A model generated the notes under the pieces. The model searched no databases. It had not been told where the DNA came from and was given only the letters and a program-made list of their open reading frames with translations. A stretch of 64,000 nt of DNA from NCBI RefSeq assembly GCF_046119375.1, contig NW_027362768.1:196850001-196914000 (forward strand), in the 5' to 3' direction. Source of the DNA: Phyllobates terribilis. Its lineage: Eukaryota. Shown here piece after piece: positions 32,441 to 58,024 of this stretch; the stretch's first letter is position 1, and the number at the start of each line of letters is the position of its first letter. The position numbers and the translations under genes are program-made.

Positions 32441-35400
32441 CTGCGGAAACATTGGATATTCATTATTATTCTGGTATCATCATATAATACCGCCATAGTG
32501 TACAATCATATGAAGCCGCCATCAATCGTCACACTCTGCCATTATATGTTGGGGTGATCCCCCGCAGCTGCGTCCTGTGACACGGCCGGTAGACGCCGCG
32601 GCAGACGGCACCGCTTCTCATTACCTCGTCTTTGTTGCTCAGGTTGAACTTGCTCAGGTCGATGGTGAAATAATGTTTGTTTGGCAAAATAACTTCAACT
32701 TCTTCAATCTGCAATGAATAGAAATGATCATAGGGGCGAGGGTCCACGAGTCGCACTTTATGTTCTCATTTCCAAGCAGAATAATGTCCAATGTAAGAAG
32801 GATTCTCGAAAACTGACACCTGCTCCCCGATCACCGAGTCACCGAGACAAGTAACGGAGGACGAGAAGCCCCAGAGGAAGCCGAGATGGCCGCACCGGCT
32901 CCAACAAGACAGAAGTGGCCAAAAACCTCAGACAGAAAGAGCACTCGGCTAACAGCTGTCCCCGGCGTACACTAAGGTCTCCGTCCACAACCCTGTGACC
33001 CCCAAAACCAGACCCCTCTGACCCCTACAGAAAAGAAGAGGAAAAGAGATGGATAAAGAACAAATGAGGAAGAGATGAGTCAGTGCAGAAGCAGATGGTG
33101 AGAAATGAGCTGAGTGATCGTCCTACGGTCCGGCACTCCCGACCCATGATCCCGCACTCCCTGTCCCACGGCCCCGCACTCCCCAACTCCACACTCCCCG
33201 TCCCACAGCCCCGCACTGCCCGTCCCGCACTCTCCATCCTATAGTTTCACCAACACCGCCCTTCATTGCCTGTCCTATAGTCACCATCCTATAGTCACTG
33301 CTCTATAGTCCTGCAGTTCCTATCCCATAACCCCCCAGTTCCCGTCCTATAATCCCACTGTTCCTATCCCATAGCCCTGCAGTCATCATCCTATAGTCTC
33401 ACCAACACCATCCTGCAGTGCCTGTCCTATAGTCCTGTAATCACCATCCTATAGTCACTGCTCTATAATTCTCCAGCACCGTCCTACAGTCCCCGTCCTA
33501 TATTCCTGTAGTCACCGTCCTATAGTCACTGCTCTATAATTCTGCAGCACCATCCTACAGTCCCCGTCCTATATTCCTGTAGTCACCGTCCTATAGTCAC
33601 TGCTCTATAATTCTGCAGCACCGTCCTACAGTCCCCGTCCTATATTCCTGTAGTCACCATCCTATAGTCACTGCTCTATAATTCTGCAGCACCGTCCTAC
33701 AGTCCCCGTCCTATATTCCTGTAGTCACCGTCCTATAGTCACTGCTCTATAATTCTGCAGCACCGTCCTACAGTCCCCGTCCTATATTCCTGTAGTCACC
33801 GTCCTATAGTCACTGCTCTATAATTCTGCAGCACCGTCCTACAGTCCCCGTCCTATATTCCTGTAGTCACCGTCCTATAGTCACTGCTCTATAATTCTGC
33901 AGCACCGTCCTACAGTCCCCGTCCTATATTCCTGTAGTCACCATCCTGCAGTCACTGCTCTATAGTCCCGTTGTTCCTATCCCATAGCCCCGCAGTCCCC
34001 GTCCTATAGTCACTGTGCTATTGTCCTGCAGTTGCCGTCAGTCAATTGTGGGTGGTAAATCCTCGGAGTATAAGCCCTCTGAAGACCCCATAACTTTGTA
34101 TTAGACAAGAAGAAGAAATGAATCGATGCCAAATTGTGAACCTATTGGATAAGACCATGTAGTTGGCGGAGGCGGCGCACCTCTTTGATAGTGCACTGGA
34201 ACGCCTTTGCTGACGACATTTCTGACCATTGCACATAAGGAGCCCCCGGCCGCCGTGTGCCCCCCACTCTGTACCTCGGGGATGCGGCTCAGGCATAGCA
34301 CCTGGATGTCGTACAGCGTCTTCTGGACAGAGGGGGAATATTCTCCTTTGTCGTACGGACCAGCAAATTTGTCAAGGATTATTTCTTTCACGGTTCCCCT
34401 GGAGAAACAAGAAGATACTCGTCAGATGATCGTTATCTGGGGTCAGATTGATCAGTGTGTATATGATCATTAGAGCAGGGACTACTGAGAACATATGTCC
34501 ATGGAGCGCACCGGGAGTGCGGAGACCAGCCGAGCGCAATGCCGTGCTGTCCCCGGAGGCCCCAACAAGGAAAGGAGCGGCAGAGCGCACAATCGCCCAC
34601 CGCTCCCATTCACACAGAGCTCTTCCGAGCCCTAGTCCTTGGGATCGGTGGGAGTCCCAGCAGTCGTACCCAAAGTTATCGGGAAGCTATCCAATGGTTG
34701 AGGTAGAACTTCCAAACTTCAGAATGCCCTTTTAACTCACTGGCGATGGCCAGCGGCCGCTACCGTGGTCTGTGGTGTAACATGGTGGCCGTTCGATAAG
34801 AGTGGACCTCTGTTCTGGCTCATGGACCACCCTCTTTGATGAGAAAACCCCCGGGCTGTGCCAGTCTCACCGGACACAAGGCCACTTACCAGATGGCATC
34901 AGAGTTCAGCCCCTTGTAGGAGCTGTACTTCCATTTGCAGTTGACGATGGTGGAGAAGCAGCGGTCTTTCACCTCGGGGAGCGTTGTATATTGATCTTTT
35001 ATAAAACCTTCGAATCCGGACTGTGTCGTCTTCAGGACCCTCAGATCTATAATTCCAGAGTAAACGACGGGCTGAGCTGCGGAGAGGACACCAAAAAGAC
35101 GGCATAAGATGAAGGTGCGGACCCTACAACACCCGGTGGTCTCAGGCCTGTCACAACAAGGACTACCAGACTCGTTCCAGTTCTCCTACCTCCTCGCTCC
35201 TGTTCTACTTCACAGAAATGGACGCCCTCAGAGGAATAGATAAAGGCATGAACGTGCTCCACTCCGTCCTGAAGCCAAGAGAAACAGAGACACGAAGAAA
35301 TGCATCGTATTCCCGTATATAAGCCGGTGCAAAACACTGGGAACATTTCTCTTTCTGGCAGAGTTTCCAAACTTGTGCAGAACCTTATCATGTATCTCTG

Positions 35401-51722: not shown

Positions 51723-51823
51723 ATGTCCGTTCGCGGCTTCTTCTCTACGCTCTGTATGATCGGCGTCTCGCTGGCCACATGTGAGATCGCGTGTCGCAAT
51801 GAAGATGGAGATACCGTAGACTG
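51723..51823 (+). CDS. dnase2b: dnase2b exon 1
   Basis: atcATGT start, CRNEDG..VDW motif, TG|gtaggt donor. Confidence 0.9.
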
Positions 51824-54800
51824 GTAGGTAAACACTGATGAGATCCATAGGAATCACTGATTGATCGATTCACCCCTCAATAAGGCTGCGTTCACACTTT
51901 GTGGCGTCACCATTTCAATAACGCTGCAAAAACTTTGCAGTTCTATCGCAACTGCAATGTGTGAACGCAGCCTAAAGGTTAAGACCACAGACAGATGATG
52001 AGGAGCTGCAGCCCCTTCTGTCACCATGCGATGGAGGGCCGAGGTGCCAGTGCAGCACAGCTCTACTCAATGGAGGCATCTGCCGCCCTCCAAAATCTGG
52101 GACATAAGAGTGAAGGTGCCACAGGGCTGAAGTAACTGTGCCGCTGCTGTGGCCGGGGACCCTCTATTCTCTGTGGGGTCCCAGACCACCCACCACTCTT
52201 ATCAAAGTAATAGCAACAGAAAACCCTTTACCAGACCAGTTCCTGAATTCAGCGGATCTCACTATAGATCCCAGTACAATAATGACACTGGTCCTGTAGC
52301 GATCCGAAGTGTCGGCACTGAGAATCCAGGCTGGTAAATTAGCCCAGAAGTGCATTGGGGGTGTAAACAGAAGCAGTACAGACACGCCCCCAATGCACTT
52401 CCAGACTAATTTGCTTGTTTTTTCATTACTTGATTTCTCAGCACTGGTACATCGGATCACGAGACCGGGATCAGGTTTATTGTACTGGGACCTGTGTATC
52501 TGTCCTGCTAGTGTCAGTAGGGAAACCCTCCGACTGTGCCCTGTATACAGCACCTGGAGCAGGTCGGTCCTATATGTGCCAGCGGCCAAGTTATAGGGGT
52601 CTGGACCATCGCCTACATGCTCTGGATGGCCACTTCATGTGGCCGTATTATGGCAGCACTCGTGTCCCGGTCATCAGAGCTCAGCCTCCAACATATGTAA
52701 TAAAAGCATCCGCCACCGGACCTCACTCTACTGGCTGCAGCCCCCCAGCGCCCTATGGGGGAATAGGAGGCCGGACCCTCTATTTTGCAGCAGATACTTA
52801 AGGATTTAACCCATTGTGATCTTTCTACATACAGTGCAGAGAAGTCCTTTTTTTTGCACAGATTTTAATTAGAAAATGTACAAAAATATGTATAAAAAAA
52901 AAAAAAAAAGGCCCCTCAGGCAAGAGTCCGGGTGGATGATGATGATGGGGGTCCTTGCACATAGACTCTGGGGGGACGATGAAGGAGAAGAGTCCGGGGG
53001 GACGATGGCTGAGGTCCCTGCACACAGTACAGTCCGGGAAGACGATGGCTGGGGTCCTCGCACACAGTAGAGACCGGGCGGGGGGGGGGGGGGGGACGGA
53101 CGGACGATGGCAGGGGTCCTCGCCCACAGGAGAGTCCGGGGGGGAACGATGGCAGGGGTCCTCGCCCACAGGAGAGTCCGGTGGGGTTCCGCCTGTCAGG
53201 TGGCGGAGGCCCGGAGGATCTTGACCTCGTCCCGCGGCCGGTCCTGGCTGTCCGTCTCCACCATCCCCAGCCTGTTCAGGGTCCCCAGGCCCTGGCTCAC
53301 CCGCCCGAAGATCGTGTGCTTGCCGTCCAGCCACTGGGCCGGGGCCAGGGTGAGGAAGAACTGGCTGCCGTTGGTGTCGGGCCCGGAGTTGGCCATGGCG
53401 AGGATCCCGGCCCCGGTGAACTTCAGCTCCGGGTGCAGCTCGTCGGGGAAGTGCTTCCCGTCATAGATGGAGCCTCCGCCGCGCCCGGTGCCCGTGGGGT
53501 CCCCGCCCTGTACCATGAAGTCTTTGATGATGCGGTGGAACTTGGTGCCGTTGTAGTAGCCGCGGCGGGAGAGCTCGGCGAAGTTCCTGCACGTCCGCGG
53601 GGCGTGCTCCCAGTACAGCTCCACCGTGATCGTGCCCATGCTGGTGTCCAGGCTGACGGTGGACGGCCGCCAATTGTCCGGTGGGATCCCCGCCATCCTA
53701 CACGCGTGTGACCGGGGAGCGCCGCCGCGAGAACACACTTCCGCTTTCCAAGCCTCGTTCTCAGACGCACAGCTTCCGGTGTCAATAAAGTTACTTTTGA
53801 ATACTGTAGTAACTCAGTGGCCATTGCTCATGGCAACCAATCAGAACGCTTTTTACATTTTCAACTTTTCTGAATGAATATAAACTGGAATCTGATTGGT
53901 TGTTGTGGGCAGAGCTGAAGCTACATCTTACAGCTGAGTCTCAGGAATTAAATCTCAATTTCCACAATCCGTCACTAATAAAGATAAACACAATCTCAAA
54001 TACAGGGGAAGATTTACAAGACTGCCTGAAAGACAATGTTTAAGTAATGCCAGAAGTAGCCAATCACAGAGCAGGTTTTATTTTTCAATAGCAGAATATG
54101 AAATGAAAGCTGCGCTGTGATTGGCTGCCGTGGCGTACAACAGTAATTCCAGGATCTGAGGGGTTTATGCAAAGTGGAAGTTGGGGAAACTCGTGTCAAA
54201 AAGTGTCGTCAGGCCCCAAGTAATAAAACACAGCACGCCATTTGTAAACAGTGAGGTGTTAGTGGTTCATAGTTAGAATGCATTGCATTTAGGGGGTCTG
54301 TATCAGTTTCAGAGGTCCAGTCTGGGGTCTTTATTCATTTAGAAGGTTTGGTCTTGGGTCTGTATCAGTTTTGGGGGTCCAGTCTGGGGTCTGTATCAGT
54401 TTTGGGGGTCTGGTCTGGGGTCTGTATTAGAAGGTCCGCTCTGGGGCCTGTATCAGTTTTGGGGGGGTGGGTCCAGTCTGGAGTCTGTATCAGTTTTGGG
54501 GGTCCGGCCTGGGGTCTGTATTAGTTTTGGGGGTCTGGTGTCTGTATTAGAAGGTCCTCTCTGGAGTCTGTATTAGAAGGTCCGCTCTGGGGTCTGTATC
54601 AGTTCGGGGGGGAGGGGGGGGGGTCTGGTCTGGGGTCTGTATCAGTTTGGGGGGACTGGTCTTGGGCCTGTATAAGTTCGGGGGTTCAGTCTGGGGTCTG
54701 GATCAGTTTTGGAGGTCCGGTCTGGGGTCTGTATCAATTTTGGGGGTCTGGTCTGCAGGCTGTATTAGAAGATCCGCTCTGGAGTCTGTATCAGCTCGGG

Positions 54801-54912
54801 GGGGGGGGGGTCCAGTCTGGGGCCATTATAAGTTCAGGGAGTCCGGTCTGAGGCCTGTATAAGTTTGGGGGGGTCTGGTCTGGGGTCTGTATCAGCTCAG
54901 GGGGTGATGGTG

Positions 54913-54962
<50 letters not shown>

Positions 54963-57900
54963 TATATATATATATATATAGTTATATACAGTGCATTGTG
55001 AAAGTATTTTTTCCCCCTTCAACTTTTCTAACTTTTGCCACATTTCTGGCTTCAAACATAAAGATATAAAATTCTAATTTTAGGGGGAAGAATCAACAAC
55101 AAGTGGGACACAATCATGAAGTGGAACGAAATTTATTGGATATTTTAAACTTTTTTAATAAATTAAAAACAGAAAAGTGAGGCGTGCAATATTATTCGGC
55201 CCCTTTACTTTCAGTGCAGAAGTTCAGTGAGGATCTCTGAAGGATCCAATGTTGTCCTAAATGACTGGTAATGATAACTACAATCCACCTGTGTGTAATC
55301 AAGTCTCCGTATAAATGCACCTGCTCTGTGATAGTCTCAGGGTTCTCTGCTCTGTGATAGTCTCAGGGTTCTGTTTCAAGTGCAGAGAGCATCATGAAGA
55401 CCAAGGAACACACCAGGCAGGTCCCAGATACTGTTGTGGCGAAGTTTAAAGCCGGATTTGGATACAAAAAGATTTCCCAAGTTTTAAACATCTCAAGGAG
55501 CACTGTGCAAGCGATCATATCGAAATGGAAGGAGTATCAGACCACTGCAAATCTACCAAGACCCGGCCGTCCCTCTAAACTTTCATCTCGAACAAGAAGA
55601 AGACTGATCAGAGATGCAGCCAAAAGGCCCATGATCACTCTGGATGAACTGCAGAGATCTACAGCTGAGGTGGGAGAGTCTGTCCATAGGACAACAATCA
55701 GTCGTACACTGCACAAATCTGGCCTTTATGGAAGAGTGGCAAGAAGAAAGGCATTTCTCAAAGATATCCATAAAAAGTCTCGTTTGAAGTTTGCCACAAG
55801 CCACCTGGGAGACACACCAAACATGTGGAATAAGGTGCTCTGGTCAGATGAAACCAAAATCGAACTTTTTGGCCACAATGCAAAATGATATGTTTGGCGT
55901 AAAAGCAACACAGCTCATCACCCTGAAAACACCATCCCCACTGTCAAACATGGTGGTGGCAGCATCACGGTTTGGGCCTGCTTTTCTTCAGCAGGGACAG
56001 GGAAGATGGTTAAAATTGATGGGAAGATGGACGGAGCCAAATACAGGAACATTCTTGAAGAAAACCTGTTGGGAGTCTGCAAAAGACCTGAGACTGGGAC
56101 GGAGATTTATCTTCCCACAAGACAATGATCCCAAACATAAAGCAAAATCTACAATGGAATGCTTCAAAAATAAACGTATCCAGGTGTTAGAATGGAAACG
56201 TCAAAGTCCAGACCTGAATCCAATCGAGAATCTGTGGAAAGAGCTGAAAACTGCTGTTCACAAACGCCCTCCATCCAACCTCACTGAGCTCGAGCTGTTT
56301 TACAAGGAAGAATGGGCAAGAATTTCAGCCTCTCGATGTGCAAAACTGATAGAGACGTACCCCAACCAGCTGTAATCGCAGGAAAAGGTGGCGCTACAAA
56401 GTATTAACTCAGTGGGGCCGAATAATATTGCACGCCCCACTTTTCAGTTTTTAATTTGTTAAAAAAGTTTAAAATATCCAATAAATTTCGTCCCACTTCA
56501 CGATTGTGTCCCACTTGTGGTTGATTCTTCCTCCCAAAAATTAGAATTTTATATCTTTATGTTTGAAGCCAGAAATGTGGCAAAAAGTAGAAAAGTTCAA
56601 GGGGGGGAAATACTTTCACAATGCACTGTATATGCTTTATTTTTCCTATACTTTGATACATATATATCTAATCTGATTATATGGACTGTGACCGTCCTCC
56701 TTTCGTTATTTGGGTTTATTTGTACATTGATCCATTTCACGCTGCTCCTCCGCTCTGTTTTCGGCTTTTTTAATGTCTTGTATGTTTTTTTATTTGTTGC
56801 GGATTATCAGTTTGTTTAGCAATATATCTGTATATACCTTCATGGTGTGTGAAGCAGTATATATAGAATTTTGTGTTTTGGGCTGATCTGTGGTTAGGTT
56901 TCTCCTTTAGGGCCGTCTGTTCTATGTTGACACAGTTTTATATTCGGGCCGTTCTTCTTTTTTGGTGGTTTCTTACCATTGACTCTTTCAGAAGGGTCGT
57001 TATCATTATTATAGATTTTCACAATATGTAAATATAAATTGATTATCCCAGATTTCTCATATTAATATGACCGGTATATTTTGATGGGAACAGTGTCGTC
57101 CGTACTCGGCTCCCAACCCCGTACTAAGGAAAGTAGAGCCAATGGCTGAAGAAAAGTTCTGCAACTTCTGTGCTATTTTGGTGATTTCCTCATAGACAAC
57201 AAAACGGGAAATGAAAGCTGCACAGAGGCGCAACATGAAGCGCATGAAGAAATCTGTAACGGCGCCCCCTCCAGTCATACACCATCTATTACACTGTTGA
57301 CTTTTTTTTTTTGCACTTTTTCTTCTCCTTTTATATTTCCAAAGGTTTGTGATTTATAAGTTGCCAATGCGTCTGATCAACGAGTCGTATGGACCAGGCC
57401 TGGACTATTTGTATCTCGACTCAAAGTCACAGGGATGGCAAGTCAGCAAATTCCTCATCAACATGACCCAGGGGGCGATGGGGCATGTGCTGGAGCAGCT
57501 TTACCAGTCATACAACGTGAGTGTGGTCTTGACCGCGTGCCTAAATATTCTGCCACACTGTTCAGGACTGGGCGTCACATACGGGCGTCACATACGGGCG
57601 TCACATACGGGCGTCACATACGGTCCTGCTTCTCCAAGAATTATGTAGGGTCAGGTGCATAAAGCGCAATGTGCACCATGGGACAGGTAAGATATTTGCG
57701 TCCGTGCAAAAAAAACTCCGCGTAATTCTATATAAACCCGCGGGACAGGAAGATACATTGCCCCAGCAGTCGGTAGACAAAGTGCTTTGGATAAATGCAT
57801 TTCGGGAACCCTTTATAACTGAGCTAAGAAGGTACAATTATGAAGGAAATGTCAGATGATGTGATGTGTCTGCGTGATATTTCCTGAGATTTGTGCAGGT

Positions 57901-58024
57901 TTTCTTGCATCTCACTATATTTTCTTATTTTTCTTCGTTCAGAGAAACGACACGGCATACATGTTATATAATGATTCTCCGCCGGGAATGAACAGCTCCT
58001 TCACGGACAGAGGGCACTCCAAGG
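51723..58024 (+). CDS. dnase2b: Deoxyribonuclease II beta, exons 1-3 only, join(51723..51823,57345..57516,57943..58024); gene continues beyond the window
   Basis: Signal-peptide-like MSVRGFFSTLCMIGVSLATC, then EIACRNEDGDTVDW|FVIYKLP...GLDYLYLDS...LEQLY...AYMLYNDSPP...RGHSKG (first HxK motif). GT-AG ends and phases fit. The beta assignment rests on synteny with uox and samd13. Confidence 0.9.
51884..51972. mobile_element. 89-bp PIF/Harbinger-type MITE
   Basis: 14-bp perfect TIR GGCTGCGTTCACAC / GTGTGAACGCAGCC flanked by TAA on both sides. Confidence 0.8.
52848..52869 (-). promoter_or_regulatory. ATTAAA signal followed by A8, a possible ppil1 polyA site or retrocopy tail remnant
   Basis: Minus strand reads ...ctaATTAAAatctgtgcAAAAAAAA, ~330 nt after the stop. 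Confidence 0.45.
53196..53696 (-). CDS. ppil1: Peptidyl-prolyl cis-trans isomerase-like 1 (spliceosomal cyclophilin), intronless, 166 aa, nested antisense in dnase2b intron 1
   Basis: MAGIPPDNWRPSTVSLDTSMG...NFAELSRRGYYNGTKFHRIIKDFMVQGGDPTGTGRGG...GAGILAMANSGPDTNGSQFFLTLAPAQWLDGKHTIFGRV... The N-terminus is PPIL1-specific and the active-site R/F/M/Q/N/F/W/L/H residues are present. Single uninterrupted ORF. Confidence 0.95.
   Translation of the reverse strand: MAGIPPDNWRPSTVSLDTSMGTITVELYWEHAPRTCRNFAELSRRGYYNGTKFHRIIKDFMVQGGDPTGTGRGGGSIYDGKHFPDELHPELKFTGAGILAMANSGPDTNGSQFFLTLAPAQWLDGKHTIFGRVSQGLGTLNRLGMVETDSQDRPRDEVKILRASAT
53700..53800 (-). promoter_or_regulatory. Putative ppil1 core promoter with two ETS/GABP-type sites
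   Basis: GCGGAAGTG (~53737-53745) and ACCGGAAGC (~53772-53780) on the minus strand, in a CpG-rich segment 40-85 nt upstream of the ATG. Confidence 0.55.
54290..54905 (+). repeat. ~30-bp degenerate minisatellite (GGGGTCTGTATCAGTTTTGGGGGTCCAGTCT)
   Basis: Recurrent ggggtctgtat cores. Confidence 0.85.
54917..54988. repeat. (TA)n microsatellite abutting the Tc1 insertion
   Basis: Direct reading. Confidence 0.95.
54989..56628 (+). mobile_element. Full-length (1640 bp) Tc1 DD34E transposon with ~215-bp TIRs; transposase inactivated
   Basis: TA|CAGTGCATTGTGAAAGTATTT...AAATACTTTCACAATGCACTG|TA; TIRs 54989-55202 and ~56413-56628. ORF from 55394 has a nonsense codon at 55886, a frameshift near 56060 and a small 3' deletion. 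D(WSDE), D(QDND) and E(PIEN) are spaced 34. Confidence 0.96.
57345..57516 (+). CDS. dnase2b: dnase2b exon 2
   Basis: Long polypyrimidine tract + aag acceptor; FVIYKLP...YQSYN |gtgagt. Confidence 0.93.
57943..58024 (+). CDS. dnase2b: dnase2b exon 3
   Basis: ttcgttcag| RNDTAYMLYNDSPPGMNSSFTDRGHSK G|gtaagt. Confidence 0.93.

What the first reader, a model, noticed from the sequence alone, without database searches (positions are those of the whole stretch)
52848..53800. Intact intronless PPIL1 nested antisense in dnase2b intron 1: candidate functional or replacement retrogene
Mammalian PPIL1 is multi-exon and lies elsewhere, not in the SAMD13-UOX-DNASE2B block (established knowledge). Here it is one uninterrupted 166-codon ORF with all cyclophilin active-site residues. 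By-eye identity to the recalled human protein is ~75-80%, with mostly conservative changes and near-saturated G/C third positions. It has a CpG/ETS promoter, an ATTAAA + A8 3' end and a one-residue insertion (IYDGKH). This pattern suggests purifying selection on a retroposed spliceosome component. It may be a lineage-specific duplicate or may have replaced the parental gene. Transcription antisense to dnase2b could couple or interfere with the host gene. No TSD is visible, so the insertion may be old.
Basis: partly seen in the sequence, partly recalled or inferred. Interest (0 to 1): 0.78.

Follow-up and report, generated by a model that had tools for sequence, protein, structure and literature searches.

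The report
Frog PPIL1 is a replacement retrogene
This poison-frog relative makes its spliceosome helper protein PPIL1 from an intact, transcribed, intron-free copy sitting backwards inside the first intron of the DNase II gene; seven other hyloid and Australian ground frogs have the same copy, and it seems to have replaced the original four-exon gene, a known kind of event not yet described for this gene.

Summary
Window 53696..53196 (minus strand) is an uninterrupted 166-codon PPIL1 ORF. RNA contigs place it inside dnase2b intron 1 (51823-57343), antisense.

RNA contigs from four runs in two studies show one unspliced transcript of about 0.8-0.9 kb. It runs from about 53736-53749 to 52848-52856, ending just after the ATTAAA signal.

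The same intronless copy lies between dnase2b exons 1 and 2 in Ranitomeya, Eleutherodactylus, Hyla, Mixophyes and Pseudophryne. In Bufo it lies inside the DNase II gene, but exon 1 was not in the fetched DNA. Ranoid frogs (Lithobates, Gastrophryne, Hyperolius), Pelobates and Xenopus keep a four-exon gene elsewhere.

The "IYDGKH" insertion is also present in the ranoid multi-exon genes, so it predates the retroposition.

Each of 15 annotated hyloid or myobatrachid species has only one PPIL1 protein. This suggests the parent gene was lost, but no genome-wide search was possible.

dN/dS among retrocopies is mostly 0.10-0.18. GC3 is 0.81-0.98, against 0.36-0.56 in the parental genes. A 5' block with an ETS motif is shared with the parental 5' regions and coincides with the transcript start.

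This is a new member of a known kind, the orphan retrogene. The scan has flagged similar replacements of other genes in this genome (UHRF1, TIPRL, LZTFL1, CEP43), but not PPIL1.

The parts
53196..53696 (-). PPIL1 coding sequence: 166 codons plus TGA, with no intron
   Evidence: ORF and translation. Pfam Pro_isomerase 2e-53. Human PPIL1 structure 1.6e-91. It is 100% identical to the public protein P0148. GC3 is 0.964.
53697..53749 (-). 5' UTR. RNA contig 5' ends fall at 53707, 53736 (two runs) and 53749.
   Evidence: read-laying table 8. Contig ends give only a lower bound for the transcription start.
53736..53762 (-). Block GAGAACGAGGCTTGGAAAGCGGAAGTG, containing an ETS motif (GCGGAAGTG, 53744..53736). 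It is shared with the 5' regions of the parental multi-exon genes, so it was probably carried in with the parental 5' UTR.
   Evidence: Flank BLAST: Mixophyes retrocopy against Xenopus parent, 20 nt at 90% identity, at the same distance from the ATG. Alignments. The block coincides with the contig 5' ends.
53772..53779 (-). Second ETS-like motif, CCGGAAGC, upstream of the inherited block
   Evidence: Read from the sequence. It is conserved in Ranitomeya and partly in Bufo.
52848..53195 (-). 3' UTR. It holds GC-rich tandem repeats (52991-53186), a T16 run (52894-52909 on the + strand as A16), the ATTAAA signal (52869..52864), and a cleavage region at the A8 run (52855..52848).
   Evidence: Tandem Repeats Finder. 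RNA contigs end at 52848 and 52852. In three runs one repeat unit of 55-56 nt is absent, with GG..GA ends, so this is not an intron.
51723..51822 (+). Host gene dnase2b, coding exon 1 (MSVRGFF...VD; signal peptide)
   Evidence: tblastx conservation with Mixophyes. GT..AG joint 51822->57344 in all four runs. tblastn hits in five relatives.
51823..57343 (+). dnase2b intron 1 (5,521 nt), which holds the antisense PPIL1 gene
   Evidence: Spliced contigs skip exactly this stretch.
57344..57516 (+). dnase2b coding exon 2
   Evidence: Pfam DNase_II 4.2e-13. Contigs end at 57516, and their loose letters read into exon 3.

Best explanation
This is the frog's working PPIL1 gene, and probably its only one. 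PPIL1 is the spliceosomal cyclophilin.

Origin (inferred from synteny, intron loss and phylogenetic distribution). The gene arose when a spliced PPIL1 mRNA was reverse-transcribed and inserted, antisense, into intron 1 of dnase2b. This happened in the common ancestor of Hyloidea and Myobatrachidae, after that lineage split from Ranoidea.

Promoter (inferred). The copy carried about 70-90 nt of the parental 5' UTR, including an ETS (GCGGAAGT) element. Today's transcripts start at that element. The retrocopy therefore probably brought part of its own core promoter, was expressed broadly at once, and made the four-exon parent dispensable.

Loss of the parent (inferred from single-copy protein sets only). 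The four-exon parent was then lost.

Composition (shift shown; cause inferred). The whole coding sequence now lies within about 0.55 kb of the transcription start, and its third codon positions have been driven to near-saturating G/C.

Shown directly: the intact ORF, the nesting in dnase2b intron 1, the unspliced transcript with its ends, the shared locus in seven other species, the multi-exon gene in ranoids and non-neobatrachians, purifying selection, and the GC3 shift.
For: Gene structure across species:
- The CDS is intronless (501-504 bp) and lies inside the DNase_II gene on the opposite strand in Ranitomeya variabilis, Bufo gargarizans, Mixophyes fleayi, Pseudophryne corroboree, Eleutherodactylus coqui and Hyla sarda.
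- tblastn places it between dnase2b exons 1 and 2 in five of these.
- Lithobates, Gastrophryne, Hyperolius, Pelobates and Xenopus have four coding exons of 56/155/69-72/218-221 nt, with identical intron positions, and none lies in a DNase II gene.

Phylogeny. The distribution matches the published clade (Hyloidea, (Myobatrachidae, Calyptocephalella)), which is sister to the clade that contains Ranoidea (PMC7823230).

Copy number. There is one PPIL1 protein per species among 13 hyloid and 2 myobatrachid annotated genomes.

Selection. NG86 dN/dS is 0.137 (window against Ranitomeya), 0.112 (against Bufo) and 0.140 (against Mixophyes).

Expression. Contigs of 786-834 nt from four runs in two studies are unspliced and run from 52848/52852 to 53707-53749. 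The same runs carry spliced dnase2b, which shows that they are RNA.

Inherited 5' block.

Composition. GC3 is 0.81-0.98 in the retrocopies. In the parents it is 0.36-0.56 overall, and only 0.27-0.40 in the promoter-distal exons 3+4. Functional mammalian retrogenes also gain GC relative to their parents (PMC7181179).
Against: - No genome-wide TBLASTN of any hyloid genome was possible, and the ancestral RPS10-SerRS interval was not inspected in a hyloid. Loss of the parent therefore rests on annotated protein sets only.
- The protein tree puts the two myobatrachid copies outside (Ranoidea + Hyloidea), and the AU test marginally rejects monophyly of the retrocopies (p = 0.03). This conflicts with a simple single-insertion history unless there was homoplasy or gene conversion.
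- No target-site duplication or 3' UTR homology to the parent could be recovered.
- Logan contigs cannot show strand, exact start or expression level.
- Inheritance of the promoter rests on a block of about 27 nt.
Confidence: 0.8

Rival explanations
1. It is an extra, functional duplicate: the retrogene is real and expressed, but the four-exon parent still exists in this genome, unannotated or missed, so nothing was replaced.
For: No whole-genome search could be run here. Protein collections can miss genes that lie in assembly gaps of very large frog genomes.
Against: All 15 independently annotated hyloid or myobatrachid species show a single PPIL1 protein, and all eight loci examined are the intronless one. 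dN/dS of 0.10-0.15 over more than 70 Myr fits an essential single-copy gene.
Confidence: 0.1
2. The retroposition is older, in the stem of all Neobatrachia. Parent and copy then coexisted and were lost reciprocally: ranoids lost the copy, while hyloids and myobatrachids lost the parent. The hyloid copy may also have been overwritten by parental cDNA through gene conversion.
For: The protein tree groups hyloid retrocopies with the ranoid parental genes to the exclusion of the myobatrachid retrocopies (98/94 support; AU p = 0.03). The states N8, E157 and K159 are shared by Ranoidea and Hyloidea.
Against: This history needs an extra loss and long coexistence of both copies. Two of the supporting sites (157, 159) and the further site 10 also flip in other lineages. 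The alignment has only 167 columns. A large compositional shift in the retrocopies can bias amino-acid trees.
Confidence: 0.12
3. It is a non-functional processed pseudogene, or an assembly or cDNA contamination artefact.
For: None beyond the general fact that most retrocopies are dead.
Against: The ORF is intact in eight species with diverged flanks at the same locus. dN/dS is far below 1. A discrete transcript is present in two studies.
Confidence: 0.01

Closest known systems
Orphan retrogenes of mammals (Ciomborowska et al. 2013, PMC3548309; Carelli et al. 2016, PMC4772013), for example RNF113
   Same: An mRNA-derived, intronless copy is under purifying selection, is expressed from a CpG-rich promoter, and stands in for a parental gene that is no longer found in the lineage. 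[quoted passage not shown]
   Different: The gene (PPIL1) and the clade (Hyloidea + Myobatrachidae frogs) are different. Here the core promoter seems to have been inherited from the parent, a route that paper estimates for only about 3% of expressed retrocopies. The GC3 shift is also extreme, about +0.3 to +0.6.
Canonical vertebrate PPIL1 (human 6p21; structures 2x7k and 1xwn, and spliceosome cryo-EM entries)
   Same: The protein has the same length class (166 aa), is 78-79% identical, and keeps all the cyclophilin catalytic residues. Human PPIL1 is the best match by a wide margin over PPIL2, PPWD1 and CWC27.
   Different: The frog gene has no introns, against four coding exons. It sits in a different locus. 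It has one extra residue (D79), which is shared by all Neobatrachia, including species with the multi-exon gene, and its C-terminus is one residue shorter.
Other replacement retrogenes flagged by this scan in the same genome (UHRF1, TIPRL, LZTFL1, CEP43)
   Same: They show the same pattern: an intact intronless housekeeping gene that is reported as the only copy in 'modern' frogs (AI notes, not checked here).
   Different: Those are reported as shared by all Neobatrachia or by all frogs examined. PPIL1 is intronless only in Hyloidea + Myobatrachidae, and ranoids keep the parent, which gives a living before-and-after comparison.

Membership tests
PPIL1 (spliceosomal cyclophilin) orthologue group | Single cyclophilin-type PPIase domain that covers almost the whole ~166-aa protein | tested here: met
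   Pfam PF00160, residues 14-163, 2e-53.
PPIL1 (spliceosomal cyclophilin) orthologue group | Closer to PPIL1 than to any other cyclophilin paralogue | tested here: met
   Human PPIL1 scores 308 bits, against 161 bits for PPIL2 and 152-156 for PPWD1. The top database hits are all named PPIL1.
PPIL1 (spliceosomal cyclophilin) orthologue group | Catalytic-site residues of active cyclophilins (R55, F60, M61, Q63, A101, N102, Q111, F113, W121, L122, H126 in human numbering) | tested here: met
   All are present, shifted by +1 after the D79 insertion (alignments).
PPIL1 (spliceosomal cyclophilin) orthologue group | Binding to SKIP/SNW1 and residence in activated spliceosomes | not testable with these tools
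   No biochemical data are available. No complex prediction was run, because the claim does not rest on it.
Processed retrocopy (retrogene) | Lacks all introns of the parental gene | tested here: met
   tblastn gives one HSP in the window and in six relatives. The parental genes have three introns at conserved positions in five species.
Processed retrocopy (retrogene) | Lies at a locus different from the parental gene | tested here: met
   The retrocopy is in dnase2b intron 1. The parent lies between RPS10 and a seryl-tRNA synthetase gene in Hyperolius, beside another gene in Pelobates, and is never inside DNase II.
Processed retrocopy (retrogene) | Homology to the parent is limited to the mature mRNA (UTRs included) and stops at its ends | tested here: inconclusive
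   5' homology extends to about -66/-90 and then stops. The 3' UTR is replaced by lineage-specific minisatellites, and only T-runs match.
Processed retrocopy (retrogene) | Poly(A) remnant and target-site duplications | tested here: inconclusive
   The A8 run coincides with the present cleavage site, so it cannot be told apart from a functional site. Flanks do not align between Hyloidea and Myobatrachidae, so target-site duplications cannot be recovered at this age.
Orphan (parent-replacing) retrogene | No functional parental gene in the same genome | tested here: inconclusive
   Each of 15 annotated species has one PPIL1 protein. No whole-genome nucleotide search or inspection of the ancestral locus was possible.
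Orphan (parent-replacing) retrogene | Purifying selection and expression | tested here: met
   dN/dS is 0.10-0.15 for most retrocopy pairs. Unspliced transcript contigs are present in four runs from two studies.

The most novel reading that the evidence does not exclude
PPIL1 may be one of a series of housekeeping genes that neobatrachian frogs swapped for intronless copies able to drive their own transcription. The scan has flagged UHRF1, TIPRL, LZTFL1 and CEP43 elsewhere in this genome.

Ranoid frogs still carry the four-exon parent, so PPIL1 would offer a clean before-and-after natural experiment. It would show how loss of introns and closeness to the promoter drive synonymous sites to G/C saturation. 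Two candidate causes are selection for export of unspliced mRNA and promoter-centred biased gene conversion.

It would also provide a rare genomic change that unites Hyloidea with Myobatrachidae. The odd gene tree could further mean that the hyloid copy was overwritten once by parental cDNA.
Probability: 0.3. Interest if true: 0.6.

Novelty: new member of a known kind. Interest (0 to 1): 0.45.

Why it matters
- A component of the splicing machinery is itself made from a gene that no longer needs splicing, across a large radiation of frogs.
- The case is well bracketed. The intronless copy occurs in Hyloidea + Myobatrachidae, and the four-exon gene in Ranoidea and in older frog lineages. This makes it a usable phylogenetic marker.
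- The same bracketing gives a natural experiment on how retrogenes gain expression. Here the route is probably an ETS core element carried in the 5' UTR.
- It also bears on why functional intronless genes become GC-rich. The part of the gene that has GC3 of 0.27-0.40 in the parents has GC3 of 0.78-0.98 in the retrocopies.
- It warns annotators that 'PPIL1' in these frogs is not positionally orthologous to PPIL1 of Xenopus or mammals.

Tried and rejected
1. A second PPIL1 paralogue in hyloids. I suspected one because Dendrobates and Bufo bufo proteins sat in the Mixophyes 90% cluster. Alignment shows they are the same orthologue: Dendrobates is 97% identical to the window protein. This was a clustering artefact.

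2. The D79 insertion as a novelty of the retrogene. Rejected: ranoid multi-exon genes have it too, in a 72-nt exon 3 against 69 nt in Pelobates and Xenopus.

3. The 55-56-nt skip in RNA contigs (53089/90 to 53146) as an intron. Rejected: the ends are GG..GA, the length equals one 3' UTR repeat unit, and one run has other letters there.

4. A 5' exon or a uox-driven chimeric transcript. No supported joint leaves the PPIL1 5' end, and the sequence beside the contig ends has no AG acceptor.

5. Homology between the retrocopy and parental 3' UTRs. Only T-runs match.

6. Direct test of parental loss through the ancestral neighbours (RPS10 and seryl-tRNA synthetase), and an empty-site test in ranoid dnase2b. 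Both would need searches with joined spliced models of those genes. Single exons fall outside the length window of the protein word search. Joined CDSs of the parental PPIL1 genes, which match database proteins exactly, were built only inside scripts for GC3 and dN/dS.

7. Notebook searches for 'rps10' and 'dnase2b' found nothing.

8. The Logan protein cluster P0025 reads like mammalian or human PPIL1 with a 5' extension. I take it for human-like, so it was not saved, compared or searched further.

Full report
**1. The observation**

On the minus strand an ATG at 53696 opens a 166-codon frame that ends with TGA at 53198-53196. The product is a single cyclophilin domain: Pfam PF00160, 2e-53.

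Its best match among solved structures is human PPIL1 (2x7k, 1.6e-91, 308 bits). The next paralogue, PPIL2, scores 161 bits. Identity to the mammalian cluster is 78-79%. The catalytic residues are all kept.

- GC3 is 0.964, in a neighbourhood of 0.43 GC.
- Two ETS motifs lie at 53744..53736 and 53779..53772.
- ATTAAA lies at 52869..52864, followed by an A8 run at 52855..52848.
- There is one extra residue, D79.

**2. The host gene**

tblastx against relatives and Pfam identify DNase II exons on the + strand:
- Exon 1 is 51723-51822.
- Exon 2 is 57344-57516.
- Exon 3 starts near 57943.

Contigs from four public runs join 51822 to 57344 with GT..AG ends. This shows that the runs contain spliced RNA and that intron 1 is 51823-57343.

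PPIL1 lies inside this intron, antisense. It sits about 1.0 kb from the exon 1 donor and about 3.6 kb from exon 2.

A uricase exon at 34281-34364 on the minus strand puts uox on the same strand as PPIL1, further downstream.

**3. Expression**

The four runs come from two studies. They were chosen because they hold about 0.6 of the sampled words of a 1.3-kb query. That share is what one expects if they hold only the transcript.

Each run gives a PPIL1 contig.
- Three runs give contigs of 786-834 nt. The fourth gives 605-nt and 261-nt pieces.
- The contigs differ from the window at 0-3 letters.
- They cover from 52848 or 52852 up to 53707, 53736, 53736 and 53749.
- They show no splice.

Contigs in the flanking intron are 151 nt long at depth 2-4.

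The only internal difference is the absence of one 55-56-nt unit of the 3' UTR tandem repeat. I read this as an allele.

The transcript therefore runs from about 40-53 nt upstream of the ATG to 8-16 nt past ATTAAA. Contigs cannot show strand, exact ends or expression level.

**4. Relatives**

The word search returned one PPIL1 per frog species. The nearest is Ranitomeya, at 97-98% identity. P0148, an unnamed public protein on a 399-Mb chromosome, is identical to the window protein.

Look-ups of the encoding loci split the frogs into two groups.

*Intronless CDS (501-504 bp), inside the DNase_II gene on the opposite strand:*
- Ranitomeya variabilis
- Bufo gargarizans
- Eleutherodactylus coqui
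- Hyla sarda
- Mixophyes fleayi
- Pseudophryne corroboree

In five of them tblastn places the gene between dnase2b exons 1 and 2, always in the same orientation.

*Four coding exons (56/155/69-72/218-221 nt) with identical intron positions, spread over 1.8-15 kb, never within DNase II:*
- Lithobates
- Gastrophryne
- Hyperolius
- Pelobates
- Xenopus

In Hyperolius the neighbours are RPS10 and a seryl-tRNA synthetase gene.

The intronless group equals one of the two main neobatrachian clades of Hime et al.: (Hyloidea, (Myobatrachidae, Calyptocephalella)). That clade is sister to the one containing Ranoidea (PMC7823230).

The simplest history is one retroposition on the stem of that clade. It would be younger than the Heleophryne split (140-152 Ma) and older than crown Hyloidea (67-77 Ma), using that paper's dates.

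The D79 insertion is present in the ranoid multi-exon genes, so it arose in the parent before retroposition.

**5. Replacement**

Across 13 hyloid and 2 myobatrachid annotated genomes only one PPIL1 protein appears. All eight loci examined are the intronless one.

An apparent second paralogue turned out to be a clustering artefact. The window itself holds no other PPIL1-like fragment.

I could not search whole genomes or read the ancestral RPS10-SerRS interval in a hyloid. Loss of the parent is therefore inferred, not shown.

**6. Selection and composition**

- Nei-Gojobori dN/dS among retrocopies is 0.10-0.18 for most pairs. Window against Ranitomeya is 0.137, against Bufo 0.112, and against Mixophyes 0.140.
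- The two pairs of dendrobatid against Pseudophryne give 0.37-0.43. There dS is depressed because both sequences are GC3-saturated.
- Parental genes give 0.04-0.09.
- GC3 is 0.81-0.98 in the retrocopies and 0.36-0.56 in the parents.
- Within the parents, the promoter-proximal exons 1+2 have GC3 of 0.44-0.83. Exons 3+4, which lie 1-15 kb away, have only 0.27-0.40.
- The same codons (71 to the end) reach 0.78-0.98 in the retrocopies.

Mordstein et al. report that functional mammalian retrogenes gain GC4 relative to their parents, and they argue for selection on unspliced mRNAs (PMC7181179).

A rival cause is promoter-centred GC-biased gene conversion. GC-rich minisatellites with unrelated units directly follow the stop codon in three hyloid lineages. 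I cannot separate the two causes here.

**7. Promoter**

The 5' flanks of the retrocopies share a block, GAGA(C/A)(C/G)GAGGC(G/T)TGGAA.GCGGAAGT.
- It lies about 40-66 nt before the ATG in the window, and at a similar distance in the other retrocopies.
- It is also found in the Xenopus, Pelobates and, in part, Lithobates parental genes.
- Further upstream the similarity stops.
- The RNA contig 5' ends (53736, 53736, 53749) fall on this block.

I infer that the retroposed mRNA carried this ETS-containing stretch of 5' UTR, and that it now serves as core promoter. Carelli et al. estimate promoter inheritance for about 3% of expressed retrocopies (PMC4772013). This step rests on about 27 nt and needs a reporter test.

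**8. An unexplained conflict**

A protein tree places the two myobatrachid copies outside (Ranoidea + Hyloidea), with 98/94 support. An AU test gives p = 0.03 against monophyly of the retrocopies.

The signal comes from a few sites (8, 10, 157, 159), and three of them (10, 157, 159) also flip in other lineages. Homoplasy on 167 columns under a strong compositional shift is the likeliest cause.

Long coexistence of both copies, with gene conversion by parental cDNA in the hyloid stem, is not excluded.

**9. Comparison and verdict**

This fits the known class of orphan retrogenes (PMC3548309, PMC4772013). No paper in the searched library links PPIL1 to a retrogene, although public annotations already name these genes PPIL1.

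Earlier notes of this scan report the same kind of replacement for UHRF1, TIPRL, LZTFL1 and CEP43 in this genome. I did not check those.

I rate this a new member of a known kind. It is well supported and of moderate interest.

One Logan cluster (P0025) looked human-like and was left aside.

Noticed in passing
L002:8171-8350 (Bufo gargarizans): A partial, inverted PPIL1 fragment (about residues 111-167, 67-72% identical, frame broken at its 5' side) lies 1.65 kb upstream of the Bufo retrogene. It looks like a local partial duplication.
   Followed up: partly
window 52991-53186; L001:10502-10900; L002:10505-10850: GC-rich minisatellites follow the stop codon directly in three hyloid lineages, with unrelated units: 40-56 nt in the window, 20 nt in Ranitomeya and 34 nt in Bufo. 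In the window species the array differs by one unit between the assembly and the RNA contigs.
   Followed up: partly
window 54293-54905 and 54916-54988: A tandem array with a 31-nt unit (about 20 copies) and an (AT)36 run lie 0.6-1.3 kb upstream of PPIL1. Ranitomeya has a longer version of the same array.
   Followed up: no
window 55000-56800: An interspersed repeat with Tc1/mariner-like transposase remnants (for example PDLNPIENLWKELK at 56208-56273) gives very high summed contig depth in all four RNA runs. This suggests an abundantly transcribed transposon family.
   Followed up: no
L001:3209-3265; L003:9446-9475: Public uox models in Ranitomeya and Mixophyes begin with short, non-conserved coding exons upstream of PPIL1 on the same strand. 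In those annotations PPIL1 is therefore also nested, in sense orientation, in a uox 5' intron. The other five annotated loci list no uricase gene within 10 kb. This was not verified in the window.
   Followed up: partly
window 53181-53711 (+) and 53423-53824 (-): Long alternative ORFs (176 aa antisense; 133 aa in another frame) overlap the PPIL1 CDS. Their translations are low-complexity (P/G/A/R-rich). I take them for by-products of the extreme GC3, not genes.
   Followed up: no
alignment A2 and trees: In the protein tree the myobatrachid PPIL1 falls outside Ranoidea + Hyloidea (AU p = 0.03 against retrocopy monophyly), which is at odds with the shared insertion site.
   Followed up: partly
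L007, L009, L011, L004, L006 (parental genes): The multi-exon PPIL1 genes show a steep GC3 drop: 0.44-0.83 in the promoter-proximal exons 1+2, against 0.27-0.40 in exons 3+4.
   Followed up: partly
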